A stretch of DNA of 64,000 nucleotides. Origin: Ascidiella aspersa (lineage: Eukaryota). A program made the position numbers and the translations under genes. The stretch lies in the NCBI GenBank assembly GCA_963924565.1, contig OZ004615.1:8184001-8248000 (forward strand), written 5' to 3'. Under the pieces are notes generated by a model. The model was not told where the DNA came from, did no database searches, and saw nothing but the letters and a program-made list of their open reading frames with translations. Below are positions 1 through 24,200 of the stretch, one piece after another (within the stretch, counting starts at the first letter, position 1; every line of letters starts with the position of its first letter).

Positions 1-234
1 AAGGATTGGACGAATTGTAGCCGGCGGGTTGGTTAATGGAAACCTTCATATCTGGTTTTGTGCATGTAGCTTTCGTTTCTTGGTAACCGGAGCAGAGGTT
101 TTTAAGCTCTTTCATATCATTACTACACAAACATGTGTAGTTTTTGTGACATTTTGTCTCCTCCGCCAGGGTTAGATTCTCACCGGGATAAGTGCAGCTG
201 GGTTTGGTCTCGGCAGACATGGTTTTGTTGCACT
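1..234 (-). CDS. Repeat unit 5, exon A (partial)
   Basis: Acceptor tttag|AG TGC AAC AAA; ECNKTMSAETKPSC... as in the other units. Confidence 0.9.
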
Positions 235-3200
235 CTAAACAAATATGAATAAATTATGAAATGATAACAAATAATTTCAAAGCGCTTATTCAAATATAGG
301 GAAATATATTATCCACATGGGTAAACAAACTTCAAAAATACGTTTTTTTGGCATGATACTAATGACTATGGGTCTCCGATGCTTGTCATTTTATTTAGGA
401 TACCGATATGCGATATTTTACGCAAAAAGTATCGCGATTCTTCCCAAAACCAAATGACGACATTAGTAAGGTTAAAAAAGTAAAATACAAAACTTTAAAC
501 GTACAATGCTCTTATTGTCCATGTAATTTGCTCAAAATAAACTTTTGTCTTAAAATTTAGGTACCTCTAGCTGTTTAGCTAATATCTTTTGATAAGTGAT
601 TCTTTTAATGTAAAAAGCATTGCGTTGGATTTGAAATCAAAGCTGAAATCCACAAATTAAGTTAGTATTAGTTAGGCACCGATAACACCCGAGCATCGGA
701 CGAGCACCAATAATATCACTTGGCTTTTGGCATCAGGTCTTATCCGATATTTTCGGACATCATCCCTATTAATGAATTTAGAATCCTTACCGTACGAAAG
801 ATATGGCAGTATGGATCCACAATCGACGACTTACCACATGTGTATTTTTGGCAACAAGATGTTGGATCATCGACTTCGTATGCTAATTCGCCTTCTAAAA
901 CATTACATTTGCTTTCTTGGTATTCGTCCTTCGATTGGCACACTTCAGTGGTTTTGTTGATTTTATAACAACCAAGGTTCGATAGCCGTTCGCTTGTGCA
1001 AAAATTATCTACCTGGCAATTTCCGTCTTTGCTTGTCCAGCGTGAACCAGGCTGCAAACAATTAATTGCATTAAAACTTTTGGGTTTAATAACCTAAATA
1101 GCAATTATATCATTTAAACAGGTTTCAGAATGATTGATTAAAATGATCACTTACACTCTTCAGTTCTTTATCTGCTGTAATGCAATACCGACATTCAATA
1201 GTATAGTTGGAGCAACACGACGTCTGTCCAGTTTCCAGGTTTGGCTGAAACACTTTCTCGTGACCAAGAGGTATGTTGGTGGTGTTATCACTTCTAAGAC
1301 ACAGCTTGTTTAGTTCCGTTTCGTTCTTACACTTGCATTGGAAGGTTCGCGGACAGCATTTGTTGTCCGCCGTGGTCTCCACCTTGGCGTGATAGAAATT
1401 GTTTAGTTCGGATAATAAAAATTAACATAGCACGATATAAATAAACTGTTTAAACAACCACAAAGCAATACACAAACAGTGTAGTTTGTTGAACTGAGTC
1501 AAATTAAATAAACCATGAAAAATAGTAAAATGTTCGTGAAATATAGAATGGAATAGAATTTTCACAATTTAAGTGTTTAACTTACGGTGTCTTGATATAG
1601 CGAACAACTGTCAATGCCGTCCGTTTGATTGCAAGCGCTACGATTACAAATGCACTCTATTTTAGGACAGCATCCTTCATAAAATGTCTCGTTGACGACA
1701 TTTTTTGTATACCAAACTTGACTACAAGTGGATTGAGGAAATTCTGTTTCGCATTTCGAGGAGTCACATTCGCAAACTGTTGACTTGCATCCGCATTCTT
1801 TTGGATATTCATCACTGAAAAATTGTAACAAAATATGAAATTGTAGTTTAAGTTAATGATGAAAAGTACGATATACACTCATAACATTCCTAACTAAAAA
1901 CTTTTGCCAGGAAAGTTATACATTTTGAAACTCACTTGTCAATTACTTTTGGCGACCAAGACTGTTTATCACATGTTTGGTTGGTTTCTGGGCATGAGGG
2001 GCATACGCATTTGTACTGTGGACAACATTGGTCGTCTGGGTTGGTTCTTACACGGATCATGCCTTTCACTGAGCAATTGTAATTTGTCCTGTATAAAGAA
2101 ATTAGACGTTGATTAAATACGCTAGTCACTTACAAATTTTAAATAAAATTAGAATTTCGCCGCTAAATAAACCGATAAGCTTTCGCTAAGTTTTTAATAA
2201 TCTAAATACATTACACTGTATGAACCAAAATGTTTTTCAATGTAAAGCAATTAATTATCTAAGCGTTATTCTAAAGGAAAAATGTATAATTTACTTGTAC
2301 CAATAAATTCTCAAAATACTCACCAATAATCGCAATGCTTAGACAGCATTGTGTCATTATTACACACGCATTGGAAATCATCACAGCATTGACCCGGAGG
2401 TTTTTCCGTTTTAACCGCATGTTCTATGTTAGCTAAACAACTTTTCGTTTCGTACTCTTCTAAAGGTTGGCAATTATCTTCTGTGTCGTGGATGGTTTCG
2501 ATCGAATAGCAAGAAGTCACGTCATTGACGTCGGTTTTGATAGAGGAGCATGTCTTAGTTTCCATACATCCGTTTGATTTGGCTTCGGTAAACGTATCAC
2601 CTCTGGAAATAATGTGATTCGTGCTGTTTATACAACCATTGCATGCACAGGTCCAATTACTGCAACAATCCTCTTCATTTTTTACATCCACTTTGGAATA
2701 GCCCGTCTCGCAAGATTGATTTCCAACTTTGCACTCTTGGCACACACATTTGTACGAAGGACAGCAAGGATCGGAAGCATTGTAACCAGCAACCTTGTCG
2801 ACGACCACCTCCATATCTGGTTTAGTACATTTAGCTTTCGTTTCCTGGTAGTCGGAGCAAAGGTTTTTCAAATTCTCCATGTCGGTGCTACATGTGCAGT
2901 TGTACTGAGGATAGCAACTTGTTTCAATGTTGTATTCTTGGGCTTTTTCGCCTGGATGTAGGCATTTATAAGGGGGCGAAGTTCCGCTCGTGTTGCAAAC
3001 TGCGGAGGAAAATAACGAAAACAAAAATTAAATTTTAGCATTTTCATTATATATAAACCAATATATATCTAAAATGTAGTCGTAAGATTTGTTAAAACCA
3101 TTAAAATTACCCAGTAGATAAATAAGGTATATTCAACGTTTTACATAATTAAGAAAAATATTGTGAAACTAAAATGGATTAAAAAAATCACTTGAAACTA

Positions 3201-6200
3201 ATTAACTTACCACATCGATATGTCATGCAACATCCAACTCTTCCGTTTTCCACTGCAATTTCCCCTTCTTTAACGCAATTGTTATCCTGGAAACTCTGTA
3301 ATGTCGTGCAGGTTGTGTTTTCATTAAATATTGTCATTATCAGCCGACATGAGTCATCTGACGCGGAAACTCTGTTCTTTGAGCAAGTTTTCGACAAGTG
3401 ACATTGGTCGGATGTTTCATCATACACTGTTCCAATTGGAATGTAAGTTCCGTTTTCCATTTTGCAGCTGTTGCAAACGCACGTCCAACTAGAACAGCAA
3501 TCTCCTTCGGTCTTAAGATCCTTCTCTTCGTAACCTTCTATACACGTGATGTTCTTTTCAGCACAAGTATCGCAAACACATTGGTACGATGGGCAGCAAG
3601 GATTGGACGAATTGTAGCCGGCGGGTTGGTTAATGGAAACCTTCATATTTGGTTTTGTGCATGTAGCTTTCGTTTCTTGGTAACCGGAGCAGAGGTTTTC
3701 AAGCTCTTTCATATCATTACTACACAAACATGTGTAGTTTTTGTGACATTTTGTCTCCTCCGCCAGGGTTAGATTCTCACCGGGATAAGTGCAGCTGGGT
3801 TTGGTCTCGGCAGACATGGTTTTGTTGCACTCTAAACAAATATGAATAAATTATGAAATGATAACAAATAATTTCAAAGCGCTTATTCAGATATAGGGTA
3901 ATATATTAACCACATGGGTAAACAAACGTCAAAAATACGTTTTTTTGGCATGATACTAATGACTATGGGTCTCCGATGCTTATCATTTTATTTAGGATAC
4001 CGATATGCGATATTTTACGCAAAAAGTATCGCGATTCTTCCCAAAACCAAATGACGACATTAGTAAGTTCAAAAAAGTAAAATACAAAACTTTAAACGTA
4101 CAATGCTCTTATTGTCCATGTAATTTGCTTAAAATAAACTTTTGTCTTAAAATTTAGGTACCTCTAGCCGTTTACCTAATATTTTTTGATAAGTGATTCT
4201 TTTAATGTAAAAAGCATTGCGTTGGATTTGAAATCGAGGCTGTAATGCACAAATTAAGCTAGTATTAGTTAGGCACCGATAACACCCGAGCATCGGACGA
4301 GCACCAATAATATCACTTGGCTTTTGGTATTGGATCTTATCCGATATTTTCGGACATCATCCCTATTAATGAATTTAGAATCCTTACCGTACGAAAGACA
4401 TGGCAGTATGAATCCATAATCGACGACTTACCACATGTGTATTTTTGGCAACAAGATGTTGGATCATCGACTTCGTATGCTAATTCGCCTTCTAAAACAT
4501 TACAGTTGCTTTCTTGGTATTCGTCCTTCGATTGGCACACTTCAGTGGTTTTGTTGATTTTATAACAACCAAGGTTCGATAGCCGTTCGCTTGTGCAAAA
4601 ATTATCTACCTGGCAATTTCCGTCTTTGCTTGTCCATCGTGAACCAGGCTGCAAACAATTAATTGCATTAAAACTTTTGGGTTCAATAACCTAAATAGCA
4701 ATTATTTCATTTAAACAGGTTTCAGAATGATTGATTAAAAATGATTACTTACACTCTTCAGTTCTTTATCTGCTGTAATGCAATACCGACACTCAATAGT
4801 ATAGTTGGAGCAACACGACGTCTGTCCAGTTTCCAGGTTTGGCTGAAACACTTTCTCGTGACCAAGAGGTATGTTGGTGGTGTTATCACTTCTAAGACAC
4901 AGCTTGTTTAGTTCCGTTTCGTTCTTACACTTGCATTGGAAGGTTCGCGGACAGCATTTGTTGTCCGCCGTGGTCTCCACCTTGGCGTGATAGAAATTGT
5001 TTAGTTCGGATAATAAAAATTAACATAGCACGATATAAATAAACTGTTTAAACAACCACAAAGCAAAACACAAACAGTGTTGTTTGTTGAACTGAGTCAA
5101 ATTAAAATAAACCATGAAAAAAAGTAAAATGTTCGTGAAATATAGAATGGAATAGAATTTTCACAATTTAAGTGTTTAACTTACGGTGTCTTGATATAGC
5201 GAACAACTGTCAATGCCGTCCGTTTGATTGCAAGCGCTACGATTACAAATGCACTCTATTTTAGGACAGCATCCTTCATAAAATGTCTCGTTGACGACAT
5301 TTTTTGTATACCAAACTTGACTACAAGTGGATTGAGGAAATTCTGTTTCGCATTTCGAGGAGTCACATTCGCAAACTGTTGACTTGCATCCGCATTCTTT
5401 TGGATATTCATCACTGAAAAATTGTAACAAAATATGAAATTGTAGTTTAAGTTAATGATGAAAAGTACGATATACATTCATAAGATTCCTAACTAAAAAC
5501 TTTTGCCAGGAAAGTTATACATTTTGGAACTCACTTGTCAATTACTTTTGGCGACCAAGACTGTTTATCACATGTTTGGTTGGTTTCTGGGCATGAGGGG
5601 CATACGCATTTGTACTGTGGACAACATTGGTCGTCTGGGTTGGTTCTTACACGGATCATGCCTTTCACTGAGCAATTGTAATTTGTCCTGTATAAAGAAA
5701 TTAGATGTTGATTAAATACGCTAGTCACTTACAAATTTTAAATAAAATTAGAATTTCGCCGCTAAATAAACCGATAAGCTTTCGCTAAGTTTTTAATAAT
5801 CTAAATACATTACACTGTATAAACCAAAATGTTTTTCAATGTAAAGCAATTAATTATCTAAGCGTTATTCTAAAGGAAAAATGTATAATTTACTTGTACC
5901 AATAAATTCTCAAAATACTCACCAATAATCGCAATGCTTAGACAGCATTGTGTCATTATTACACACGCATTGGAAATCATCACAGCATTGACCCGGAGGT
6001 TTTTCCGTTTTAACCGCATGTTCTATGTTAGCTAAACAACTTTTCGTTTCGTACTCTTCTAAAGGTTGGCAATTATCTTCTGTGTCGTGGATGGTTTCGA
6101 TCGAATAGCAAGAAGTCACATCATTGACGTCGGTTTTGATAGAGGAGCATGTCTTAGTTTCCATACATCCGTTTGATTTGGCTTCGGTAAACGTATCACC

Positions 6201-9200
6201 TCTGGAAATAATGTGATTCGTGCTGTTTATACAACCATTGCATGCACAGGTCCAATTACTGCAACAATCCTCTTCATTTTTTACATCCACTTTGGAATAG
6301 CCCGTTTTGCAAGATTGATTTCCAACTTTGCACTCTTGGCACACACATTTGTACGAAGGACAGCAAGGATCGGAAGCATTGTAACCAGCAACCTTGTCGA
6401 CGACCACCTCCATATCTGGTTTAGTACATTTAGCTTTCGTTTCCTGGTAGTCGGAGCAAAGGTTTTTCAAATTCTCCATGTCGGTGCTACATGTGCAGTT
6501 GTACTGAGGATAGCAACTTGTTTCAATGTTGTATTCTTGGACTTCTTCGCCTGGATGTTGACATATACGAGGGGGCGAAGTTCCGCTCGTGTTGCAAACT
6601 GCGGAGGAAAATAACGAAAACAAAAATTAAATTTTAGCATTCTCATTTTATATAAACCAATATATATATAAAATGTATAGTCATAAGATTTGTTAAAACC
6701 ATTAAAATTACCCAGTAGATAAATAAGGTATATTCAACGTTTTACATAATTAAGAAAAATATTGTGAAACTAAAATGGATTAAAAAAATCACTTGAAACT
6801 AATTAACTTACCACATCGATATGTCATGCAACATCCAACTTTTCCTTTTTCAACTGCAATTTCCCCTTTTTTAATGCAATTTTTATCCTCGAAACTCTGT
6901 AATGTCGTGCAGGTTGTGTTTTCATTATATGTGGTCTCTATCAGCCGACATGAGTCAACTGACGCGGAAACTCTGTTCTTTGAGCAAGTTTTCGACAAGC
7001 GACATTGGTCGGATGTTTCATCATACACTGTTCCAATTGGAATGTAAGTTCCGTTTTCCATTTTGCAGCTGTTGCAAACGCACGTCCAATTAGAACAGCA
7101 ATCTCCTTCGGTCTTAAGATCCTTCTCTTCGTAACCTTCCATACACGTGATGTTCTTTTCAGCACAAGTATCGCAAACACATTGGTACGATGGGCAGCAA
7201 GGATTGGACGAATTGTAGCCGGCGGGTTGGTTAATGGAAACCTTCATATCTGGTTTTGTGCATGTAGCTTTCGTTTCTTGGTAACCGGAGCAGAGGTTTT
7301 CAAGCTCTTTCATATCATTACTACACAAACATGTGTAGTTTTTGTGACATTTTGTCTCCTCCGCCAGGGTTAGATTCTCACCGGGATAAGTGCAGCTGGG
7401 TTTGGTCTCGGCAGACATGGTTTTGTTGCACTCTAAACAAATATGAATAAATTATGAAATGATAACAAATAATTTCAAAGCGCTTATTCAAATATAGGGA
7501 AATATATTATCCACATGGGTAAACAAACGTCAAAAATACGTTTTTTTGGCATGATACTAATGACTATGGGTCTCCGATGCTTGTCATTTTATTTAGGATA
7601 CCGATATGCGATATTTTACGCAAAAAGTATCGCGATTCTTCCCAAAACCAAATGACGACATTAGTAAGTTCAAAAAAGTAAAATACAAAACTTTAAACGT
7701 ACAATGCTCTTATTGTCCATGTAATTTGCTCAAAATAAACTTTTGTCTTAAAATTTAGGTACCTCTAGCTGTTTAGCTAATATCTTTTGATAAGTGATTC
7801 TTTTAATGTAAAAAGCATTGCGTTGGATTTGAAATCAAAGCTGAAATGCACAAATTAAGTTAGTATTAGTTAGGCACCGATAACACCCGAGCATCGGACG
7901 AGCACCAATAATATCACTTGGCTTTTGGTATCAGGTCTTATCCGATATTTTCGGACATCATCCCTATTAATGAATTTAGAATCCTTACCGTACGAAAGAT
8001 ATGGCAGTATGGATCCACAATCGACGACTTACCACATGTGTATTTTTGGCAACAAGATGTTGGATCATCGACTTCGTATGCTAATTCGCCTTCTAAAACA
8101 TTACAGTTGCTTTCTTGGTATTCGTCCTTCGATTGGCACACTTCAGTGGTTTTGTTGATTTTATAACAACCAAGGTTCGATAGCCGTTCGCTTGTGCAAA
8201 AATTATCTACCTGGCAATTTCCGTCTTTGCTTGTCCAGCGTGAACCAGGCTGCAAACAATTAATTGCATTAAAACTTTTGGGTTTAATAACCTAAATAGC
8301 AATTATTTCATTTAAACAGGTTTCAGAATGATTGATTAAAAATGATCACTTACACTCTTCAGTTCTTTATCTGCTGTAATGCAATACCGACATTCAATAG
8401 TATAGTTGGAGCAACACGACGTCTGTCCAGTTTCCAGGTTTGGCTGAAACACTTTCTCGTGACCAAGAGGTATGTTGGTGGTGTTATCACTTCTAAGACA
8501 CAGCTTGTTTAGTTCCGTTTCGTTCTTACACTTGCATTGGAAGGTTCGCGGACAGCATTTGTTGTCTGCCGTGGTCTCCACCTTGGCGTGATAGAAATTG
8601 TTTAGTTCGGATAATAAAAATTAACATAGCACGATATAAATAAACTGTTTAAACAACCACAAAGCAAAACACAAACAGTGTTGTTTGTTGAATTGAGTCA
8701 AATTAAAATAAACCATGAAAAAAAGTAAAATGTTCGTGAAATATAGAATGGAATAGAATTTTCACAATTTAAGTGTTTAACTTACGGTGTCTTGATATAG
8801 CGAACAACTGTCAATGCCGTCCGTTTGATTGCAAGCGCTACGATTACAAATGCACTCTATTTTAGGACAGCATCCTTCATAAAATGTCTCGTTGACGACA
8901 TTTTTTGTATACCAAACTTGACTACAAGTGGATTGAGGAAATTCTGTTTCGCATTTCGAGGAGTCACATTCGCAAACTGTTGACTTGCATCCGCACTCTT
9001 CTGGATATTCCTCACTGAAAAATTGTAACAAAATATAAAATTATAGTTTAAGTTAATGATGAACAATACGATATACACTCATAAGATTCCTAACTAAAAA
9101 CTTTTGCCAGGAAAGTTATACATTTTGGAACTCACTTGTCAATTACTTTTGGCGACCAAGACTGTTTATCACATGTTTGGTTGGTTTCTGGGCATGAGCG

Positions 9201-12200
9201 GCATACGCATTTGTACTGTGGACAACATTGGTCGTCTGGGTTGGTTCTTACACGGATCATGCCTTTCCGTGAGCAATTGTAATTTGTCCTGTATAAAGAA
9301 ATTAAACGTTGAATAAATACACTGGTCACTTAAATTTTAAGTAAAATTAGGATTTCGCCGCTAAATAAACCGATAAGCTTTTGCTAAGTTTTTAATATTC
9401 TATATACATTACACTGTATAGACTAAAATGTGTTTTTTTTGTAAAGCAATTAGTTATCTAAGCGTTATTCTAATGGAATAATATACAATTTTCTTGTACC
9501 AATAAATTCTCAAAATACTTACCAATAATCACAATGCTTAGACAACATTGTGTCATTATTACACACGCATTGGAAATCATCACAGCATTGACCCGGAGGT
9601 TTTTCCGTTTTAACCGCATGTTCTATGTTAGCTAAACAACTTTTCGTTTCGTACTCTTTTAAAGGTTGGCAATTATCTTCTGTGTCGTGGGTGGTTTTGA
9701 TCGAATAGCAAGAAGTCACATCATTGACGTCGGTTTTGATAGAGGAGCATGTCTTAGTTTCCATACATCCGTTTGATTTGGCTTCGGTAAACGTATCACC
9801 TCTGGAAATAATGTGATTCGTGCTGTTTATACAACCATTGCATGCACAGGTCCAATTACTGCAACAATCCTCTTCATTTTTTACATCCACTTTGGAATAG
9901 CCCGTTTTGCAAGATTGATTTCCAACTTTGCACTCTTGGCACACACATTTGTACGAAGGACAGCAAGGATCGGAAGCATTGTAACCAGCAACCTTGTCGA
10001 CGACCACCTCCATATCTGGTTTAGTACATTTAGCTTTCGTTTCCTGGTAGTCGGAGCAAAGGTTTTTCAAATTCTCCATGTCGGTGCTACATGTGCAGTT
10101 GTACTGAGGATAGCAACTTGTTTCAATGTTGTATTCTTGGGCTTCTTCGCCTGGATGTGGGCATTCAAGAGGGGGCGAAGTTCCGCTCGTGTTGCAAACT
10201 GCGGAGGAAAATAACGAAAACAAAAATTAAATTTTAGCATTCTCATTATATATAAACCAATATATATCTAAAATGTAGTCGTAAGATTTGTTAAAACCAT
10301 TAAAATTACCCAGTAGATAAATAAGGTATATTCAACGTTTTACATAATTAAGAAAAATATTGTGAAACTAAAATGGATTAAAAAAATCACTTGAAACTAA
10401 TTAACTTACCACATCGATATGTCATGCAACATCCAACTCTTCCGTTTTCCACTGCAATTTCCCCTTCTTTAACGCAATTGTTTTCCTGGAAACTCTGTAA
10501 TGTCGTGCAGGTTGTGTTTTCATTATATGTGGTCATTATCAGCCGACATGAGTCAACTGACGCGGAAACTCTGTTCTTTGAGCAAGTTTTCGACAAGCGA
10601 CATTGGTCGGATGTTTCATCATACACTGTTCCAATTGGAATGTAAGTTCCGTTTTCCATTTTGCAGCTGTTGCAAACGCACGTCCAATTAGAACAGCAAT
10701 CTCCTTCGGTCTTAAGATCCTTCTCTTCGTAACCTTTTTTACACGTGATGTTCTTTTCAGCACAAGTATCGCAAACACACTGGTACGATGGGCAGCAAGG
10801 ATTGGACGAATTGTAGCCGGCGGGTTGGTTAATGGAAACCTTCATATCTGGTTTTGTGCATGTAGCTTTCGTTTCCTGGTAACCGGAGCAGAGGTTTTCA
10901 AGCTCTTTCATATCATTACTACACAAACATGAGTAGTTTTTGTGACATTTTGTCTCCTCCGCCAGGGTTAGATTCTCACCGGGATAAGTGCAGCTGGGTT
11001 TGGTCTCGGCAGACATGGTTTTGTTGCACTCTAAACAAATATGAATAAATTATGAAATGATAACAAATAATTGCAAAGCGCTTATTCAAATATAGGGAAA
11101 TATATTATCCACATGGGTAAACAAACGTCAAAAATACGTTTTTTTGGCATGATACTAATGACTATGGGTCTCCGATGCTTGTCATTTTATTTAGGATACC
11201 GATATGCGATATTTTACGCAAAAAGTATCGCGATTTTTCCCAAAACCAAATGACGACATTAGTAAGTTCAAAAAAGTAAAATACAAAACTTTAAACGTAC
11301 AATGCTCTTATTGTCCATGTAATTTGCTTAAAACAAAGTTTTGTCTTAAAATTTAGGTACCTCTAGCTGTTTACCTAATATTTTTTGATAAACGATTCTT
11401 TTAATGTAAAAAGCATTGCGTTGGATTTGAAATCGAGGCTGAAATGCACAAATTAAGTTAGTATTAGTTGGGCACCGATAACACCCGAGCATCGGACGAG
11501 CACCAAGAGTATCACTTGGCTTTTGATATCGGATCTTATCCGATATTTTCGGACTGAATCCCTATTAATGAATTTAGAATCCTTACCGTACGAAAGACAT
11601 GGCAGTATGGATCCATAATCGACGACTTACCACATGTGTATTTTTGGCAACAAGATGTTGGATCATCGACTTCGTATGCTAATTCGCCTTCTAAAACATT
11701 ACAGTTGCTTTCTTGGTATTCGTCCTTCGATTGGCACACTTCAGTGGTTTTGTTGATTTTATAACAACCAAGGTTCGATAGCCGTTCGCTTGTGCAAAAA
11801 TTATCTACCTGGCAATTTCCGTCTTTGCTTGTCCATCGTGAACCAGGCTGCAAACAATTAATTGCATTAAAACTTTTGGGTTCAATAACCTAAATAGCAA
11901 TTATTTCATTTAAACAGGTTTCAGAATGATTGATTAAAAATGATTACTTACACTCTTCAGTTCTTTATCTGCTGTAATGCAATACCGACACTCAATAGTA
12001 TAGTTGGAGCAACACGACGTCTGTCCAGTTTCCAGGTTTGGCTGAAACACTTTCTCGTGACCAAGAGGTATGTTGGTGGTGTTATCACTTCTAAGACACA
12101 GCTTGTTAAGTTCCGTTTCGTTTTTACACTTGCATTGGAAGGTTCGCGGACAGCATTTGTTGTCCGCCGTGGTCTCCACCTTGGCGTGATAGAAATTGTT

Positions 12201-15200
12201 TAGTTCGGATAATAAAAATTAACATAGCACGATATAAATAAACTGTTTAAACAACCACAAAGCAAAACACAAACAGTGTTGTTTGTTGAATTGAGTCAAA
12301 TTAAAATAAACCATGAAAAAAAGTAAAATGTTCGTGAAATATAGAATGGAATAGAATTTTCACAATTTAAGTGTTTAACTTACGGTGTCTTGATATAGCG
12401 AACAACTGTCAATGCCGTCCGTTTGATTGCAAGCGCTACGATTACAAATGCACTCTATTTTAGGACAGCATCCTTCATAAAATGTCTCGTTGACGACATT
12501 TTTTGTATACCAAACTTGACTACAAGTGGATTGAGGAAATTCTGTTTCGCATTTCGAGGAGTCACATTCGCAAACTGTTGACTTGCATCCGCATTCTTTT
12601 GGATATTCATCACTGAAAAATTGTAACAAAATATGAAATTGTAGTTTAAGTTAATGATGAAAAGTACGATATACACTCATAAGATTCCTAACTAAAAACT
12701 TTTGCCAGGAAATTTATACATTTTGGAACTCACTTGTCAATTACTTTTGGCGACCAAGACTGTTTATCACATGTTTGGTTGGTTTCTGGGCATGAGGGGC
12801 ATACGCATTTGTACTGTGGACAACATTGGTCGTCTGGGTTAGTTCTTACACGGATCATGCCTTTCACTGAGCAATTGTAATTTGTCCTGTATAAAGAAAT
12901 TAGATGTTGATTAAATACGCTAGTCACTTACAAATTTTAAATAAAATTAGGATTTCGCCGCTAAATAAACCGATAAGCTTTCGCTAAGTTTTTAATAATA
13001 TACATTACACTGTATAAACCAAGATGTTTTTTTATGTAAAGCAATTAATTATCTAAGCGTTATTCTAAAGGAAAAATGTATAATTTACTTGTACCAATAA
13101 ATTCTCAAAATACTCACCAATAATCGCAATGCTTAGACAGCATTGTGTCATTATTACACACGCATTGGAAATCATCACAGCATTGACCCGGAGGTTTTTC
13201 CGTTTTAACCGCATGTTCTATGTTAGCTAAACAACTTTTCGTTTCGTACTCTTCTAAAGGTTGGCAATTATCTTCTGTGTCATGGATGGTTTCGATCGAA
13301 TAGCAAGAAGTCACATCGTTGACGTCGGTTTTGATAGAGGAGCATGTCTTAGTTTCCATACATCCGTTTGATTTGGCTTCGGTAAACGTATCACCTCTGG
13401 AAATAATGTGATTCGTGCTGTTTATACAACCATTGCATGCACATGTCCAATTACTGCAACAATCCTCTTCATTTTTTACATCCACTTTGGAATAGCCCGT
13501 TTTGCAAGATTGATTTCCAACTTTGCACTCTTGGCACACACATTTGTACGAAGGACAGCAAGGATCGGAAGCATTGTAACCAGCAACCTTGTCGACGACC
13601 ACCTCCATATCTGATTTAGTACATTTAGCTTTCGTTTCCTGGTAGTCGGAGCAAAGGTTTTTCAAATTCTCCATGTCGGTGCTACATGTGCAGTTGTACT
13701 GAGGATAGCAACTTGTTTCAATGTTGTATTCTTGGGCTTCTTCGCCTGGATGTGGGCATTCAAGAGGGGGCGAAGTTCCGCTCGTGTTGCAAACTGCGGA
13801 GGAAAATAACGAAAACAAAAATTAAATTTTAGCATTCTCATTTTATATAAACCAATATATATATAAAATGTATAGTCATAAGATTTGTTAAAACCATTAA
13901 AATTACCCAGTAGATAAATAAGGTATATTCAACGTTTTACATAATTAAGAAAAATATTGTGAAACTAAAATGGATTAAAAAAATCACTTGAAACTAATTC
14001 ACTTACCACATCGATATGTCATGCAACATCCAACTTTTCCTTTTTCAACTGCAATTTCCCCTTTTTTAATGCAATTTTTATCCTCGAAACTCTGTAATGT
14101 CGTGCAGGTTGTGTTTTCATTATATGTGGTCTTTATCAGCCGACATGAGTCAACTGACGCGGAAACTCTGTTCTTTGAGCAAGTTTTCGACAAGCGACAT
14201 TGGTCGGATGTTTCATCATACACTGTTCCAATTGGAATGTAAGTTCCGTTTTCCATTTTGCAGCTGTTGCAAACGCACGTCCAATTAGAACAGCAATCTC
14301 CTTCGGTCTTAAGATCCTTCTCTTCGTAACCTTCCATACACGTGATGTTCTTTTCAGCACAAGTATCGCAAACACATTGGTACGATGGGCAGCAAGGATT
14401 GGACGAATTGTAGCCGGCGGGTTGGTTAATGGAAACCTTCATATCTGGTTTTGTGCATTTTGCTTTCGTTTCGTGGTATCCCGGACAATCCTTTTCCAAC
14501 TTCGTCATATTGGTTCCGCATATGCAGTTGAAGGTAGAGTAACAATCAGATTCACTCCTTGATTCATTCACTTCTTGTCCTGGGTAATTACAGTTTGGCT
14601 CCTTCGGATTTGGTGATTCATTGCATGCTGGCGAAAATAAGACAAGTTTTTATGTGAAATAAAACAACACTGAATTATTTTATTGGTTGTCGTCAACGAG
14701 ACATTTTATGAAGGATACTGTATTAAAATAGAGTGCATTTGTAATCGTAGCGCTTGTAATCAAACGGACGGCATTGACAAGACGAACCAAAATGCCTTGA
14801 TTTTTTACTGGATCAAAATTTATGAAATATTACGCCTTTATGCTAAATGAATTATAATGGGAATTGGAAATTTATTGGATGGAACAAACTGAGAAACTGC
14901 GCTTGTGAACAACGCATGCGGACTGTACTTTTTTCAAAAAAGTTTTGGTTGCCCTAAAGCAGGGGTCGGCAACCTGCGGCCCGCCAATGTAATTTTTCCG
15001 GCCCGTCGCTTCTTCGGCACGAGTCCAAGTGCATAAAAATTTCGCGCTTTTTCATCTTTCTACGTCCGGTTACGTTTGAAGCTGTCATTTGAACTAGATC
15101 ATCGCTTTTTTCCGTTGCCGGTATACTAAAAAACGCTCGTTCGCTCGCCAGGTGTGCCCTAACTTTAAAAGGTTGAAAAACACTGCACTAGGTTAACATT

Positions 15201-18200
15201 TAAACTCAACGCATTTCCTAAAGCAGTTTTATTACACTTTTCATTAGCAGTATGGATGTCTCGTGCGGACTCGAATTTTAAACCAAACAATCACTTTTTT
15301 TCGCGCTTTGCGCCAATACTTTACTGCCTCCCTAATTGCGCGGCCCGCAGAGACCAGTCTGGGTTTGGTTTTGGCCCGCGATTATAAAAAGGTTGCCGAA
15401 CCCTAACCTAAAGTAAAAATTTTGTGGTCTATGGGACGATACATCCTTTTAAAACAGTCATTGAACATGTCTTGATGTGCTTTGTCGAATACCAAATGAC
15501 GTGATAAACTGTTTCAAACGTACAGCGCAACACACGTAAGCCGACACGTAGGCCTAACAGCACTTACAGCAGGTGTAGTTTTTGCAACACGGGTTCGTCG
15601 AAAGCACCTCGGTCGCGTGCTGGTCATTGTTGCAGTTATAATCCTCTTCGGCTTTGCAGTTGTACTGCGTGTCGTTCTGGCCGGGACAGACGCACTGTTT
15701 TGTCGGACAGCAGTTGCTTTCTGTTCCCGGGACGACACTCAACACTTTAGGAGGTTTACAATCGGGATCTGCCGAACAGCTGCAGCCTGTAAATGAGTAT
15801 GGTTGGACGTTATGCATTTGGCTACTATTGTCGGAACCACCCTTGTTCGTAAGTCGGCCTTATATTATTAGAGCGAGAAGTTCAAATTTTCCAATTTCGA
15901 AGCATGGAAGAGTCGAATTGCCATATTTTTAAAAAACTGGAATTATTGAAAAATTATTTCTACTTTGGCCTGATTAAGCACGCTAGTCAAGATATTCACG
16001 GAAACGACATTAAGAACAACTCGAATCGCGCGAAGCGATCTTATCAGCAAATATATATCGTTCTGGAAAACGCGATATCACATAATGCGTATAGTTCAAG
16101 TATAATGGCATGAGACAAAAACTCACAATCGGTCTTTATGCACTCGGTGGATTCGGAATGGCGGAGAACGTATCCTTCCTTGCAGAAGCAGCCACTGACT
16201 TGTTTGGTACTTTGGCAGGTCCTATCTAAAGTCTCATAATTGCCACACGTCTTTGTCACCTGACACTGACTGGCACAGGCTGTGTATTGCGTGTTAGCTG
16301 CGGAACACGTTGGCTCTAGAAAATTAGCAGGGATATATATTGTTGAGCATTTGATTTTGCGCCTTATTTAAAATAATTCAAAACCACCAAGAATTATAGT
16401 GGTAAATTTTTACTTTTGCTCACTTGTCACAAGAATAATACATTACACATGTTGTTTTTTTTGAGAAACAAATTTCACATAGGTTTACTTTATATATAGT
16501 TTAACAGTATTTACAAAAATAAAATCAATTGAATCTTGTATTATATACTATATATTCACTTACACGTACTACAAATATAATGTTAAAATAACGATCACAT
16601 ATAGGAAACCCTAACAAAATAAAATCTAATACACAAATAAAACAAACATTTTTTTTATTTTTTTTTTTTATCCTGAACAATAAGAGAATATTTTAAAAGT
16701 TGTGAATCAAGCTTACCCGAGCAGTTGGCTGCCTTCCTCCAATCGACGCAAATTCCGTTCATCTCACATAGTTCTGCATAGCTTGAAGCAGCGCTGGAGT
16801 TGCATATGCTGCACTACAATAAAAATAAAAGTGTTAAATACTACTGGAATTGGTGACGTCAAGAAAGTTAATAACATTTTGGTCGGATATATACGTAATA
16901 AGAATATCAACGCCCATACAGAAGTAGGTATCATTTTGGACGTTTCGAATAACTCTTTATTCATTTTCAACATCTGATGTTGAAAATGAATAAAGAGTTA
17001 TTCGAAACGTCCAAAATGATACCTACTTCTGTATGGGCTTTGATATTCTTATTACGTGTTACAACAACCTCCAACCATTATGCTCCAAGGTCGGATATAT
17101 GTTTAACTAATTGCTCGTTAAAACACTCGGGCTCATTTTTTCCTAAATAATGATGAAGGTAAATAGCGATTTGCATTCGAGTACAATTTTGTTGATGTTA
17201 CGTAGCTTTATATAATTTTTTGCTATATTAGGCATAATATTAATTGTCTTTGATCACACAAAACCACCAAAACTGCCCTTCGGAACGTTATTTAAACGTA
17301 GAATTTTTTCACAGAATAACTAAATTCATAAAAAACTCAAAACAATCTGATGTTCTCACTAAAAATGGAATGTTGAAGGGGGAAACTGTAATGTGACCTA
17401 GAAGCTACGCCGAGTGAAAACTTTTTTTCATTAACCCGCCTTATAAACATGATTATAAACTCTTTCAAAGATATATATATAGGCCTATATATGTGAGTAT
17501 TTTTATAAAATTGTCAGCTCTCCGGTTGGCCTTTTATTATTTTCGTTGTTGTTTTATCAGCTTAATGGTTATACCCAGAATGCGATTCAGAATCTCCGCT
17601 ATTTTATTCTTGCAACAACAAAAGATATTTGACAGTTCAGAGATTAATCAATTAACAAGTAAACCTTATAGGCAAAATAGGAGCATGTAAGGTAATGGCA
17701 GCTCTTAAAGAGTCATTTTTTGTTCTTGGTTGATTTGTTTCTAGGTATAGTAAACGTTATTATTTTTAATTTTTCAAAGACGGAAAACATTCGCTTGCAG
17801 CATAAAAAAATGCCTTTATAGTTTAAGTTGCCCAAAGGTACAGCAAATAAGGACTAAACCGATTTCAACAAAATTGGCTATGGTAAAGTACAAACATAGC
17901 GGTAATCCGCGCAAAGGCAAGTTGTTTTGCATTTACAAAGTTAAAATGGGCAAAAAGCACGGTTTGGGGGCAGGGGGCATGGTCACTCTTCAGAATTTTA
18001 TCTTTTAACCAAGAAAAACGCCGTGTTGGGTCGCAAACCGTAGGTAAAATTTCTATATCGTCGGGCATTAAATCGGCACCGATGAAAACCACGTCATACC
18101 AGACGAGTACCGATATAACCTCCCAGTATGGGGACTTTGATGATATTATCATCAACATATAGCAAAAGACGAGTAACACTGCAATAACGCGCGTGTCGGA

Positions 18201-21200: not shown

Positions 21201-24200
21201 CCTAGCCTTCAAAACAAATTGGAAAACAATGTATTAAATATCTGCAAACGTGTTTCGCCATTCACCGAATTAGACAGGGAGATGCCGTCAGCTTGATACA
21301 ACTCGACTGTTGTATAGTCCCATCGGACAAACACCTTCTTCAGGCAAGTGAGCGGTCCGCTTGGTGAGGTGGAACACACTTCGTTTTCGCTAAACAAAGC
21401 AAATGTCATTAATTGCCTGGTTCGCAGTAGTTCGTCGTTATAACTGGCCATGTTTCATTTTCTTTTAGATGCATTTGCCTTATTCCCTTGTTATGAGTAG
21501 CAACAAAATTGACCTCTTTTTTATTTAGTCATCGCAAGTTTGCGGTGTTGACTTAGTATTTGAGGTGCTCAGCAGTAATTATAAAAGTCTGCACCAATTA
21601 ACAGCGACATCTTGATTGCCCATTTTTAGAGGAGACTGCAATTAGTTTTGATGTTTTAACATGAGCAGGGGGTGAGTAGAAGAATGCCATTGCAAGATTG
21701 GTGCCATATAGTTTTAAACATAACCTAGGATAAAAAAAGTAATTTTTAGAAACACCATACCTGTAGATATGGAGGCGAGATGGTGCAGTTCGGTAGGTGA
21801 CGAGAGTGTACTGACATTGACCCATGAAGCTATATGGCCTGCTATCGAAAGTCATGTAATGGGGGTCTCCATAAGCAACACAAGCACCTGCGAATACACA
21901 AATCACGTGAGCATGTGAAAATCGCTTGGTATCTGATGACAAGAAAGTGTTAAACAGAGGTCCGTTGTAAACTAATAATCTCGAACTGAGGTTTTGGCAA
22001 TTTGACTGGTCCCTGCATTATTCGAAGGAAACAAAAGATGTAACAAAGTTAACCTGTTTAAACATTACTGCTGTAATAAGAGCGTTTTACTTTTTTGTCC
22101 CCCCAAAAAAGTTATATAACCTAATGAATAAATTGTTGTCGACCCCACTTTGCGATCAGGTGATATAATTTATCAACCAAGAACTTTACGTATAGCAATG
22201 AGCTTATTGTTGAGTATATCAACTCACATTGGCATTCCACGTTGGGGCAGCAAGGGTCGTCGGGGTTGGGGATATCAACTCGGCTCTGTCCTATCGCGCA
22301 GGTCTTCTGTGAGTTTGTGCAGTACTTGGGGTGCTCGACAATCTCGCAATCGCCGTCGCAAGAGCATTGACAGCTCTTGGTCATGCAAGTGCCCGCTTTC
22401 CATGTCGAGCCGGCCTGTGCGCAAGCGAAACAACTTCGGTTTATTATGTCCCGGTTTCCCGCTTTGTCACGAACGTTCGCTCCAGCACGCAAAATACAAC
22501 AAAATGGACGGATCAACGCGACGGCGGAGGGGGATGTTTCATGGCTACCATCAACCCGAAAGGCAATCGTGTGGAAAACGATTTATACTTAATAGGATAA
22601 AACTATAGAGAGCTTGGTGTAATACAGTATCCATTTGCCGTGTCGCACAATAAGGGCAATCATTGAAAAACAGTTAATCTAAAGCCACCTTTGAACGTTT
22701 TAGTGCGAATTTCGCAGACTTGTTTTTGCTATTTCCAGCAAAAATAATTGAGGGTTTGGCGATTCATTTTTAGCACAATTTAACTCTTCTGACTATAGCT
22801 AAATATCGAACTAAATAATCGTAAATTATAAGTAACCTATCCCCAGTCCTAGCTGACGGGTTTACAGCTAAAGCATATGACTGTGTCTCCTATAGTTTAA
22901 GGCAGTCAATACATTCTGCACCAATTACAGATACTTTTATCATTTCGTCAAGGGCATAAAATATGTTTAACTATTGAATGTACAACACAATATAACCATA
23001 TAGGGCTGTTATGCATTAGCATTTTATGGCAACGTGTTCTGCACATGTTAATGTCACTCAAAATTGATATCCGATAGTTGGTTTTGGAAGTATAAGTAGA
23101 TTGTAGACATCAGATGGAATAAAGGTGGAGCCGTTTATCTTATTATTTTAGGATTGATTTAATACAAACAAAAAGAGAACTAAAAACATACAGCGCTGCG
23201 TTAGTTTAGCGTTGTTCTTTACCGAATAGCTTTGGCCCTGGTCGTAACAGTCCGATACACAGCAAGTTGCGTTGCAACACGGCGTACTACTTTTCGTGTT
23301 CGGTAGGCTGGTTTGGCCGGTGGCGCAGACCTCTTTTGTGCAAACGCTATCGTCTTGGTATAACTTCACCAGCGGACAGCCGCTTTCTTGCTCGAGACAT
23401 ATCTGTAACAAAATTAGCTCTCACAGTTACGTTTTTAATCAAAAGTAACCGTTATTGTAAACGGGTGGCAACAACACAAATTGCCGTTGCAAAATTATTT
23501 TTGTTACTAGTTTGACATATGTCTTACATACATGTGTTGCAGTATCGTAGCATGACGTATTTAGTCGGTAAAATGTTTACTGGTAAAACAACTGTTTGTT
23601 AAATGCTGAAAATATATAACAGGAAAACACCCAGGTAAAGCAATATGCTACTTTACTGGCTTGTTGTAAATATTTTTTTAGACTTAAACTAATTTAAAAA
23701 ATAAGGCAAAAAAATGAATGCAACACAAGTTTTGGTAAAACGCGATAAACCTGGGTAACGCATTCAGAACTCTTCCAAGTTTCGTTGATCGCTCTCAAAT
23801 TTTCTTCTGCGTCAAGGCACTTTGTACAAACGCACGTTCGGTTTGCGCAGCAGGGATTAAGCATACCGTCCTGAAGTAATGTGAAATAAAACAGTTTGTA
23901 AGCTAGTTAGTTGTAAATAAGGCAGGGTTGCAACGTTAATGACAATTTGAATTTAAATTTACAATTGTGAAAACGTAAATATTTTCAGTGCGCAGTGAAA
24001 CATCAGAGATTTTTAATTCGGTAATTTAATTGTGCGCATGTGCTTCATAGGTAAATTTAGCTAATCGTGTTTTTTTTTTCTAAACCAAAGTGGTCCATAA
24101 AAAGCACCTATATATTTCTCTGATTGAATTTCTTAGTTGTGAACAATGTTTACCTGCGAAAGCTCGACTTGGCGCGACTTATCTGTAATGCATTGCCCGG

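What the first reader, a model, noticed from the sequence alone, without database searches (positions are those of the whole stretch)
1..14627. Coding macrosatellite: six-exon, 708-aa module duplicated with its introns
Each 3.6-kb unit has exons of 621/676/153/229/228/217 nt (2124 nt). It starts and ends in phase 1, so whole units can be gained, lost or skipped in frame. By hand count each unit has 90 Cys (an even number, 12.7%) and about 24 N-x-S/T sequons. Introns are about as similar as exons, which implies recent expansion or concerted evolution and probably length-polymorphic alleles.
Basis: partly seen in the sequence, partly recalled or inferred. Interest (0 to 1): 0.8.

Follow-up and report, generated by a model that had tools for sequence, protein, structure and literature searches.

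The report
Six-exon cassette repeated five times
A 3.6-kb block of six exons and their introns is repeated five times in a row inside a giant secreted, cysteine-rich, von Willebrand factor/mucin-like gene of a marine animal; it is real and recently homogenised, but it is an ordinary kind of intragenic repeat.

Summary
A 3.6-kb unit is repeated head to tail 5.06 times, at 97-98% identity. The array runs from 3.7 kb before the window start to 14485, and the gene is on the minus strand.

- **Unit structure:** each unit has six AG..GT-bounded exons of 621/676/153/229/228/217 nt. That is 2124 nt (708 codons), in phase 1 at both ends, with 90 Cys and 23-24 N-glycosylation sequons.
- **Similarity:** exons are 97.7-98.7% identical and introns 95.6-97.4%. 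Variant blocks support conflicting groupings of units, which points to gene conversion or unequal crossover.
- **Independent reads:** array depth is 3.4-4.9 times that of the flank, and the reads carry the units' distinguishing letters. It is therefore not an assembly artefact.
- **Polymorphism and expression:** copy-number polymorphism is only hinted at. RNA evidence is a handful of reads on the correct strand.
- **Host gene:** several VWD-C8-TIL assemblies lie upstream and cystine-knot-like exons downstream, with no PTS region found in the window.
- **The module:** it matches no Pfam family. Only six related protein clusters turned up among 1.84 billion, and it folds partly like VWC/fibronectin type I.
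- **Origin:** a tandem paralog carries the same cassette once, so the five-fold array is a recent amplification.

It is a new member of a known kind (LPA KIV-2, nebulin triplicate region). Other scan notes on this stretch concern this same DNA, not another locus.

The parts
1..14485 (-). Part of the tandem array that lies in the window (the array continues to -3733, i.e. 3.7 kb before the window start); 3.6-kb unit, 5.06 copies in all
11031..14627 (-). Unit U1: hybrid exon A0 14627-14007 (first 142 nt diverged, array identity begins at 14485), B 13793-13118, C 12886-12734, D 12612-12384, E 12179-11952, F 11847-11631
7433..11030 (-). Unit U2: exons A 11030-10410, B 10198-9523, C 9288-9136, D 9014-8786, E 8581-8354, F 8249-8033
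3832..7432 (-). Unit U3 (reference unit): exons A 7432-6812, B 6598-5923, C 5687-5535, D 5413-5185, E 4980-4753, F 4648-4432; 2124 nt, phase 1 to phase 1
235..3831 (-). Unit U4: exons A 3831-3211, B 2999-2324, C 2088-1936, D 1814-1586, E 1382-1155, F 1051-835
1..234 (-). Start of unit U5 (exon A begins at 234; the rest of U5 and the hybrid sixth A exon lie before the window, -386..-3984)
3957..4367 (.). Dispersed repeat (SINE/MITE-like; at least 43 diverged copies genome-wide) inside the intron between exon F and the next exon A; present in every unit, so it predates the amplification
14688..14779 (+). Inverted 92-nt copy of part of exon D, 61 nt upstream of the acceptor of exon A0; 4 mismatches to all five D exons
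15557..15859 (-). Cys-rich exon just upstream of the array; its donor leaves phase 1, matching exon A0
16047..16367 (-). TIL-domain exon of the same gene
   Evidence: PF01826, E 9.5e-6
21601..22017 (-). VWD-domain exon (most array-proximal D assembly)
   Evidence: PF00094, E 2e-8
32496..35460 (-). VWD (35020-35460, 33196-33564) and C8 (32496-32729) exons of a further D assembly
43407..49430 (-). VWD (49188-49430), C8 (44281-44604) and TIL (43407-43652) exons of a further D assembly
51098..56323 (-). TIL (51098-51283), C8 (51752-52237) and weak VWD end (56072-56323): most upstream D assembly seen in the window

Best explanation
This is a genuine, recent intragenic tandem amplification at the DNA level. 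A 3.6-kb cassette of six exons with their introns, including an older transposon copy in one intron, was multiplied to five full copies. The host is a giant minus-strand gene for a secreted, disulfide-rich, N-glycosylated protein of the VWD-C8-TIL ... cystine-knot type (VWF / gel-forming-mucin / otogelin superfamily). The breakpoints lie within paralogous A-type exons.

Shown: the copies have since exchanged sequence by gene conversion or unequal crossover, and they remain under purifying selection, with every cysteine kept. Because the cassette begins and ends in intron phase 1, any whole number of units keeps the reading frame.

Inferred: each unit adds 708 residues, made of about nine to ten small disulfide-knotted VWC/fibronectin-I-like modules with about 24 N-glycan sites. 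The units extend a stalk between the multimerising N-terminal D assemblies and the dimerising C-terminal knot. The array would then act as a length and glycan-load module of an extracellular polymer, and unit number is the parameter that unequal recombination can change.
For: - **Array geometry:**
- **Intact exons:** 30 of 30 exons have AG..GT, there are no stops, and phase is 1 to 1.
- **DNA-level duplication:** introns are 95.6-97.4% identical, and a dispersed repeat sits in the same intron of every unit.
- **Sequence exchange between units:** 74 informative sites form blocks grouping {U2,U4}, {U2,U5} or {U1,U5}, and these groupings are incompatible with one tree.
- **Selection on coding sequence:** dS is 0.017-0.045, close to intron divergence of 0.026-0.045, while dN is 0.008-0.018, giving dN/dS 0.2-0.8. 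None of 37 variable residues is a Cys (P = 0.0065), and sequons number 24 against 9.7 +/- 2.7 in shuffles.
- **Independent reads:** raw DNA reads of X9 give depth about 24 on the array and about 7 on the flank. Contig word depth in X1 is 233-312 against 63. The 'other letters' in X9 are the letters of the other assembled units, at about the expected fractions.
- **RNA strand:** the few RNA reads on the array lie in the bins that hold exons A, C, D, E and F, and all have the first mate on +, which fits a minus-strand RNA.
- **Host gene:** VWD, C8 and TIL exons lie upstream, and cystine-knot-like exons lie downstream.
- **Fold:** the AlphaFold model has pLDDT 84. Residues 121-175 resemble fibronectin type I (Z 5.5, rmsd 1.3 A over 41 residues), and residues 118-214 resemble the CCN3 and collagen IIA vWC domains (Z 4.2 and 3.6).
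- **Recent amplification:** the tandem paralog has the cassette in the order A/B-C-D-E-F once, at 26-40% identity. D- and E-type exons occur in this gene only inside the array.
Against: - No splice-junction read and no full-length cDNA was seen. RNA coverage is about a dozen reads, with none on exon B although about five were expected.
- The protein's function is inferred from domain content only.
- The VWC assignment rests on modest structural scores. Pfam and PDB sequence profiles find nothing.
- The cystine-knot match is weak (E 0.011, below the cut-off).
- X1 may be the same individual as the assembly, and the origin of X9 is unknown. Copy number in independent individuals is therefore not established.
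Confidence: 0.85

Rival explanations
1. Assembly artefact: a single-copy or two-copy cassette was over-expanded by the assembler, for example by stacking haplotypes or read errors.
For: Tandem arrays of 97-98% identity are hard to assemble. In X9 the depth ratio is 3.4-3.9 rather than 5.
Against: Depth over the array is 3.4-4.9 times the single-copy flank in two data sets. Raw reads of X9 carry at least three different unit-specific letter combinations at intermediate frequencies, for example 36-43% where two of five units differ. More than two unit types therefore coexist in one sample, which two haplotypes of a single-copy locus cannot give.
Confidence: 0.04
2. Decaying or silent repeat: the array is real DNA, but its exons are no longer part of a functional transcript (a pseudo-exon array).
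For: RNA support is very thin and exon B has no read. dN/dS reaches 0.8 for some pairs.
Against: There are no stops or frameshifts in 10.6 kb of coding sequence across five units. All 30 splice-site pairs are intact and all 450 Cys codons are kept. dN is below dS and below intron divergence in every pair. Sequons are enriched 2.5-fold. Some RNA reads lie in the exon-bearing bins in the strand orientation expected of the gene.
Confidence: 0.07
3. Ligand trap rather than structural spacer: the VWC-like modules bind BMP/TGF-beta-type growth factors, as in chordin, crossveinless-2 and kielin/chordin-like protein. Amplification would then multiply binding sites.
For: Part of the module resembles VWC domains structurally. 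That VWC domains of chordin-type proteins bind BMPs is established knowledge, recalled from memory and not tested here.
Against: No sequence-level VWC match was found. The context of multiple D assemblies plus a cystine knot is that of polymer-forming VWF/mucin proteins (PMC4948705). Heavy N-glycosylation potential suits a structural or barrier role.
Confidence: 0.1

Closest known systems
LPA kringle IV type 2 repeat (human apolipoprotein(a))
   Same: A kilobase-scale unit (5.5 kb) containing whole exons and introns, repeated in tandem inside a gene. It is in frame, near-identical between copies, and encodes a disulfide-bonded extracellular module (PMC11515395, PMC4378929).
   Different: KIV-2 has two exons and 114 residues per unit, and its copy number is proven to be highly polymorphic. 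Here a unit has six exons and 708 residues, there are five copies, and polymorphism is only suggested. The protein family is unrelated.
Nebulin triplicate region (NEB TRI)
   Same: A multi-exon cassette (eight exons) repeated a few times (three) as an intragenic segmental duplication, and prone to copy-number change (PMC9109913).
   Different: Nebulin is an intracellular muscle protein made of helical repeats. The present cassette encodes secreted Cys-rich modules.
Gel-forming mucins / VWF / otogelin / ovomucin (VWD-C8-TIL proteins with C-terminal VWC and cystine knot)
   Same: Several VWD-C8-TIL assemblies on the same strand upstream, VWC-like folds, and cystine-knot-like last exons. This is the architecture described in PMC4948705. 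MUC2 C-terminal domains gave the best, though weak, structural match to the module's first half.
   Different: No PTS (O-glycosylated) region was found in the window, as in ovomucin, which is 'mucin-like without PTS' (PMC4948705). The centre is instead filled by dozens of Cys-rich N-glycosylated modules that match no Pfam family.
Kielin/chordin-like protein and other multi-VWC proteins (from memory)
   Same: Long runs of VWC-type modules combined with a VWD domain.
   Different: Those VWC domains are recognised by Pfam PF00093, and the modules here are not. Domain order is reversed, with VWD C-terminal in KCP. High-identity exon-cassette arrays are not known to me there.

Membership tests
Coding macrosatellite / intragenic exon-cassette tandem repeat (LPA KIV-2, NEB TRI kind) | Head-to-tail units of 1 kb or more with high identity | tested here: met
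   3.6-kb unit, 5.06 copies, 97.3-98.2% identity
Coding macrosatellite / intragenic exon-cassette tandem repeat (LPA KIV-2, NEB TRI kind) | Each unit holds whole exons, and a whole number of units keeps the frame | tested here: met
   Six exons, 2124 nt, phase 1 to 1, no stops, AG..GT at all borders
Coding macrosatellite / intragenic exon-cassette tandem repeat (LPA KIV-2, NEB TRI kind) | Introns duplicated with the exons (DNA-level, not retro-copied) | tested here: met
   Introns 95.6-97.4% identical; the same transposon copy sits in each F-A intron
Coding macrosatellite / intragenic exon-cassette tandem repeat (LPA KIV-2, NEB TRI kind) | Copy number differs between individuals | tested here: inconclusive
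   Array-to-flank depth ratio is about 4.6 in X1 and 3.4-3.9 in X9. U1-specific letters appear in 0-16% of X9 reads against 20% expected. No spanning reads.
Coding macrosatellite / intragenic exon-cassette tandem repeat (LPA KIV-2, NEB TRI kind) | Units are transcribed and spliced into the mRNA | tested here: inconclusive
   About a dozen RNA reads in the bins holding exons A, C-F, in minus-strand orientation; none on exon B; no junction read. Indirect support comes from dN below dS and from conserved Cys.
Gel-forming mucin sensu stricto | Three N-terminal VWD-C8-TIL assemblies | tested here: met
   VWD at about 49.2k, 35.1k and 21.8k (plus a weak one at 56k); C8 at 52.0k, 44.4k and 32.6k; TIL at 51.2k, 43.5k and 16.2k, all on the minus strand
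Gel-forming mucin sensu stricto | Central PTS domain (at least 40% Ser+Thr, Pro-rich; PMC4948705) | tested here: not met
   No minus-strand open frame of 60 aa or more with S+T+P at 38% or above in the window. The unit has 22.8% S+T+P. Not filed as a mucin.
Gel-forming mucin / VWF superfamily (VWD-C8-TIL ... CK) | C-terminal cystine-knot domain | tested here: inconclusive
   The exon at -10947..-10630 hits Cys_knot at E 0.011 (16.4 bits, cut-off 24). Both last exons match the paralog's terminal exons at 38-45% identity.
VWC domain (Pfam PF00093) | Sequence match to the family profile | tested here: not met
   No VWC hit at E up to 1 on any unit exon. A profile of the module finds no PDB sequence at E up to 10.
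VWC domain (Pfam PF00093) | Two-subdomain VWC fold (fibronectin-I-like sheet plus a CC...C hairpin) | tested here: inconclusive
   Residues 118-214 of exon B against CCN3 vWC give Z 4.2 (68 aligned) and against collagen IIA vWC Z 3.6. Residues 121-175 against FnI give Z 5.5, rmsd 1.3 A. All are below the Z of about 8 that the tool calls safe.

The most novel reading that the evidence does not exclude
The array could be a tunable 'ruler' on two levels.

- **Between individuals:** unit number would differ through unequal recombination.
- **Between transcripts:** the 92-nt inverted copy of exon D lies 61 nt ahead of the first array exon and can pair with any of the five identical D exons (predicted duplex -156 kcal/mol). 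Pairing would loop out whole units and bias which in-frame unit-skipping isoform is made, a docking-site/selector logic like Dscam but acting on a macrosatellite.

In addition, the module would define a new Cys-rich domain family that is almost absent from current protein databases.
Probability: 0.06. Interest if true: 0.7.

Novelty: new member of a known kind. Interest (0 to 1): 0.35.

Why it matters
It is a clean, well-resolved case of concerted evolution inside a coding region. Five 708-residue cassettes are still exchanging sequence, with introns and synonymous sites as an internal neutral clock and every cysteine preserved.

If unit number varies in the population, the locus would be an invertebrate counterpart of the human LPA or mucin length polymorphisms. 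It would then offer a natural experiment on how the length and glycan load of a VWF/mucin-type polymer affect its function.

The module itself is almost unrepresented in public protein data and has no Pfam model, so it is a candidate for a new domain definition.

For genome annotation, the array is a warning: short-read assemblies collapse it, as Logan contigs did here, and gene predictors may truncate the gene.

Tried and rejected
- **TRF:** it found nothing because its longest period is 500. The array was shown by self-BLAST instead.
- **Exon F donor:** my first guess gave 261 nt and broke the unit's frame. It was replaced by the donor 44 nt upstream, giving 217 nt.
- **Pfam on the six unit exons:** no family. 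The only hits were chance-level Dickkopf_N, Spectrin_3 and similar, all below cut-off.
- **Pfam on the downstream module exons:** nothing.
- **ESM Atlas:** only weak leads at 0.76-0.80 to VWC/NELL2-like clusters. I used these as a lead only.
- **phmmer of exon B against 1.84 billion cluster representatives:** six hits only.
- **Profile word-search of 5.8 billion proteins:** one hit, already known.
- **Profile against PDB sequences:** no hit.
- **Foldseek against PDB:** nothing at E up to 0.001 for either model.
- **First 120 residues of the module:** no convincing solved counterpart. The best match is the MUC2 C-terminus at Z 3.3.
- **Relatives' contigs from metagenomes:** no comparable array in the 12-21 kb that were available.
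- **Assembly-artefact reading:** rejected on depth and on paralogous variants in raw reads.
- **Pure 7.2-kb higher-order-repeat model:** rejected as a full explanation. The alternating {U2,U4} pattern holds only in alignment columns 298-790 and partly in 3023-3403, while columns 1493-2030 group {U2,U5}.
- the joined 708-residue spliced model was not sent to any search or folding tool, because it has no reference. Exons were searched and folded one by one by reference. Joined coding sequence was used only inside scripts, to count frames, Cys, sequons and dN/dS.
Full report

Yes. Self-BLAST of the window aligns 1-10887 with 3598-14485 at 97.6% identity. It aligns 1-7289 with 7199-14485 at 98.2%, and 1-3688 with 10797-14485 at 97.3%. 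TRF was silent only because its longest period is 500.

The window is C9:8184001-8248000 of a 308.6-Mb animal genome. I fetched the 40 kb before it and found one more full unit there. The array runs from window -3733 to 14485, which is 18.2 kb or 5.06 units of about 3,598 bp.

**2. Exon structure.**

The coding strand is minus. On that strand each unit has six open stretches bounded by AG and GT. In unit U3 the exons are:
- A 7432-6812
- B 6598-5923
- C 5687-5535
- D 5413-5185
- E 4980-4753
- F 4648-4432

Their lengths are 621/676/153/229/228/217 nt, 2124 nt in all. My first donor guess for exon F gave 261 nt and a broken frame.

All 30 exon borders in five units are AG..GT, and no unit has a stop. 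The cassette enters and leaves in phase 1. So do the exon just upstream (15859-15557) and the hybrid sixth A exon, which means any whole number of units is in frame.

Each unit encodes 90 Cys and 23-24 N-x-S/T sequons. Sequons are 2.5-fold enriched over composition shuffles, 24 against 9.7 +/- 2.7, with 0 of 2000 shuffles reaching 24.

**3. Edges of the array.**

Both edges lie within A-type exons. The first A exon (14627-14007) is diverged for its first 142 nt and joins the array at 14485. The sixth A exon (-3364..-3984) follows the array for 369 nt and then diverges. This pattern is what unequal exchange between paralogous exons would leave.

**4. Exons against introns, and concerted evolution.**

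Among U2-U5, exons are 97.7-98.7% identical and introns 95.6-97.4%.

By the Nei-Gojobori method, dS is 0.017-0.045, which is indistinguishable from intron divergence of 0.026-0.045. dN is 0.008-0.018, giving dN/dS of 0.2-0.8. None of the 37 variable residues is a Cys (P = 0.0065 by chance).

The 74 parsimony-informative sites fall into blocks:
- {U2,U4} against the rest in alignment columns 298-790, an alternating pattern with two-unit periodicity.
- {U2,U5} in columns 1493-2030.
- Interleaved {U2,U4} and {U1,U5} in columns 3023-3403.

These partitions cannot fit one tree. The units have therefore exchanged tracts by gene conversion or unequal crossover. A 7.2-kb two-unit step explains only part of the pattern.

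The intron between exon F and the next exon A carries a dispersed repeat in every unit. This repeat has at least 43 diverged copies genome-wide. The duplication was therefore at the DNA level and is younger than that insertion.

**5. Is it an assembly artefact?**

No. I laid reads on window 10400-16399, which covers one unit plus 1.9 kb of unique flank.

- **Raw DNA reads of X9.** These give a mean depth of about 24 over 11000-13999 and about 7 over 15400-16399, a ratio of about 3.4. The ratio is 3.9 against the 6.3-fold coverage expected from the letters read.
- **Logan contigs of X1.** These total 300 Mb, which is genome-sized, and they cover introns, so the run is DNA. The array is collapsed there, at word depth 233-312 against 61-64 on the flank. 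The ratio is 3.7-4.9, or about 4.6 summed over bins.
- **Variant letters.** The 'other letters' in X9 reads are exactly the letters that the other assembled units carry at those positions. Their frequencies are roughly as expected: 36-43% where two of five units differ, and 68-78% where three of five differ.

Several unit types thus coexist in one sample.

**6. Length polymorphism.**

This is only suggested. In X9 the depth ratio is below 5, and letters private to reference unit U1 appear in 0-16% of reads rather than 20%. That would fit fewer units or other units in that sample. However, the flank depth rests on about 47 reads, and no read spans the array.

A sample labelled as another organism (X4) holds near-identical unit contigs at two to three times its flank depth. 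It also holds one contig with an inversion junction inside a unit. I leave this unexplained.

**7. Expression.**

The RNA run X10 was read to 6% and gave few reads. Those on the array lie in the bins that hold exons A, F, E, D and C. All have the first mate on +, which in the usual stranded libraries means a minus-strand RNA.

No junction reached the listing threshold. Exon B received no read although about five would be expected. Transcription is therefore likely, and the exact splicing is unproven. The selective signature in section 4 is indirect support that the exons are translated.

**8. The host gene.**

On the same strand, upstream of the array, lie:
- VWD exons at 49188-49430, 35020-35460 with 33196-33564, and 21601-22017, plus a weak one at 56072-56323.
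- C8 exons at 51752-52237, 44281-44604 and 32496-32729.
- TIL exons at 51098-51283, 43407-43652 and 16047-16367.

CUB (62764-62976) and TSP1 (63785-64000) exons lie further up and may or may not belong to the gene.

Downstream of the array come more module exons, including one of 591 codons with 68 Cys. After these come two exons that match the terminal cystine-knot exons of the paralog at 38-45% identity. One has a sub-threshold Cys_knot hit at E 0.011.

No PTS-like open frame exists on this strand in the window. The architecture is that of the VWF / gel-forming-mucin / otogelin group described in PMC4948705. Like ovomucin it lacks a PTS region, and its centre is filled by Cys-rich modules.

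**9. The module.**

No unit exon matches any Pfam family. phmmer of exon B against 1.84 billion cluster representatives found six proteins:
- Open frames on eukaryote-like contigs in metagenomes, the best at 40% identity.
- Three short Logan contigs.
- One named protein, XP_029440310.1, an uncharacterised 3,883-residue protein of the caecilian Rhinatrema bivittatum. It has VWD domains and 28 matched stretches.

A profile word-search added nothing, and a profile search of PDB sequences found nothing.

AlphaFold models of exon B (pLDDT 84) and of its first 120 residues (pLDDT 85) are confident.
- Residues 121-175 superpose on fibronectin type I modules (Z 5.5, rmsd 1.3 A over 41 residues).
- Residues 118-214 superpose on the vWC domains of CCN3 (Z 4.2) and collagen IIA (Z 3.6).
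- The first half has only a weak match, to the MUC2 C-terminal domains (Z 3.3).

By Cys pattern, the ends of exons A and B and the E/F pair look like three VWC-like domains per unit. The remaining parts are short 'C...CC....C.C' hairpins. I therefore say the module works like VWC-type stalk modules, but I do not file it in PF00093.

**10. Origin.**

In the whole genome the module occurs only at this locus: in this gene and in a tandem paralog at window 71-127 kb on the same strand.

The paralog has the same overall layout. It carries the cassette once, in the order A/B-C-D-E-F, at 26-40% amino-acid identity, with the A/B part fused into one large exon. In the present gene, D- and E-type exons exist only inside the array.

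The sequence of events was therefore an old gene duplication, followed by a recent five-fold amplification of one cassette in this copy.

**11. Mechanism.**

Shown: the DNA array, intact frames, sequence exchange between units, and purifying selection on cysteines.

Inferred from the family: the protein is secreted, multimerises through its D assemblies and dimerises through the C-terminal knot. The array supplies 3,540 residues (5 x 708), 450 cysteines and about 120 N-glycan sites of extended stalk, so unit number sets the length and glycan load of the polymer. A role as a BMP-type ligand trap is a less likely alternative.

**12. Comparison and novelty.**

As a genomic phenomenon it is the same kind of thing as the LPA KIV-2 repeat (5.5 kb, two exons; PMC11515395, PMC4378929) and the nebulin triplicate region (eight exons, three copies; PMC9109913). 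It is a new member of a known kind, in an unusual and nearly unannotated module family.

Noticed in passing
window 14688-14779: An inverted 92-nt copy of part of exon D lies in the intron 61 nt upstream of the first array exon. It has 4 mismatches to all five D exons, which are identical to each other over this stretch. The predicted RNA duplex is -156 kcal/mol. It may be a template-switch scar of the rearrangement or a pairing site; its effect on splicing was not tested.
   Followed up: partly
window 14800-15400: A very high-copy transposon lies in the intron upstream of the array. Depth in X9 is up to about 219 against about 7 on the flank, and word depth in X1 is up to 78,700. Many inversion-type joints and loose ends appear there.
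   Followed up: no
C9:8255000-8311000 (window about 71,000-127,000; loci L008-L014): A tandem paralogous gene lies on the same strand with the same VWD/C8/TIL, Cys-rich module and cystine-knot layout. Its modules sit in large exons (open frames of 664, 496, 333 and 319 aa). It has one 88%-identical 480-bp internal duplication (77418-77890 against 78693-79169) and no high-identity array.
   Followed up: partly
L002 7923-8111 (window -12077..-11889) and L004/L003 (window -29657..-29469): The presumed last (cystine-knot) exon of the gene exists twice, about 17.6 kb apart and nearly identical. It appears to have been copied along with the neighbouring duplicated gene that other notes call a TIR/SAMD9-like STAND gene. 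Which copy is the real terminal exon is not settled.
   Followed up: no
window 13118-13793 (exon B of U1, where reads of all B copies should pile up): The RNA run X10 gave no read here, although the bins holding exons A, C, D, E and F each had some. About five reads would be expected. Skipping B alone would shift the frame.
   Followed up: no
window 11867-12221 joined to 13900-14115: One contig of run X4, labelled as another organism but near-identical in sequence, joins these two places on opposite strands. It may be an inversion inside a unit in that sample or a graph artefact.
   Followed up: no
unit residues 183-228 (end of exon A, start of exon B; e.g. window 6890-6841 and 6566-6541 in U3): Fifteen of the 37 variable residues cluster here. 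In exon A they form two alternating haplotypes, {U2,U4} against {U1,U3,U5}. At the start of exon B there are three to four different versions of a short loop before the second Cys.
   Followed up: partly
window 62764-62976 and 63785-64000: CUB and thrombospondin type 1 exons lie on the minus strand upstream of the first D assembly. Whether they belong to the same gene is unknown.
   Followed up: no
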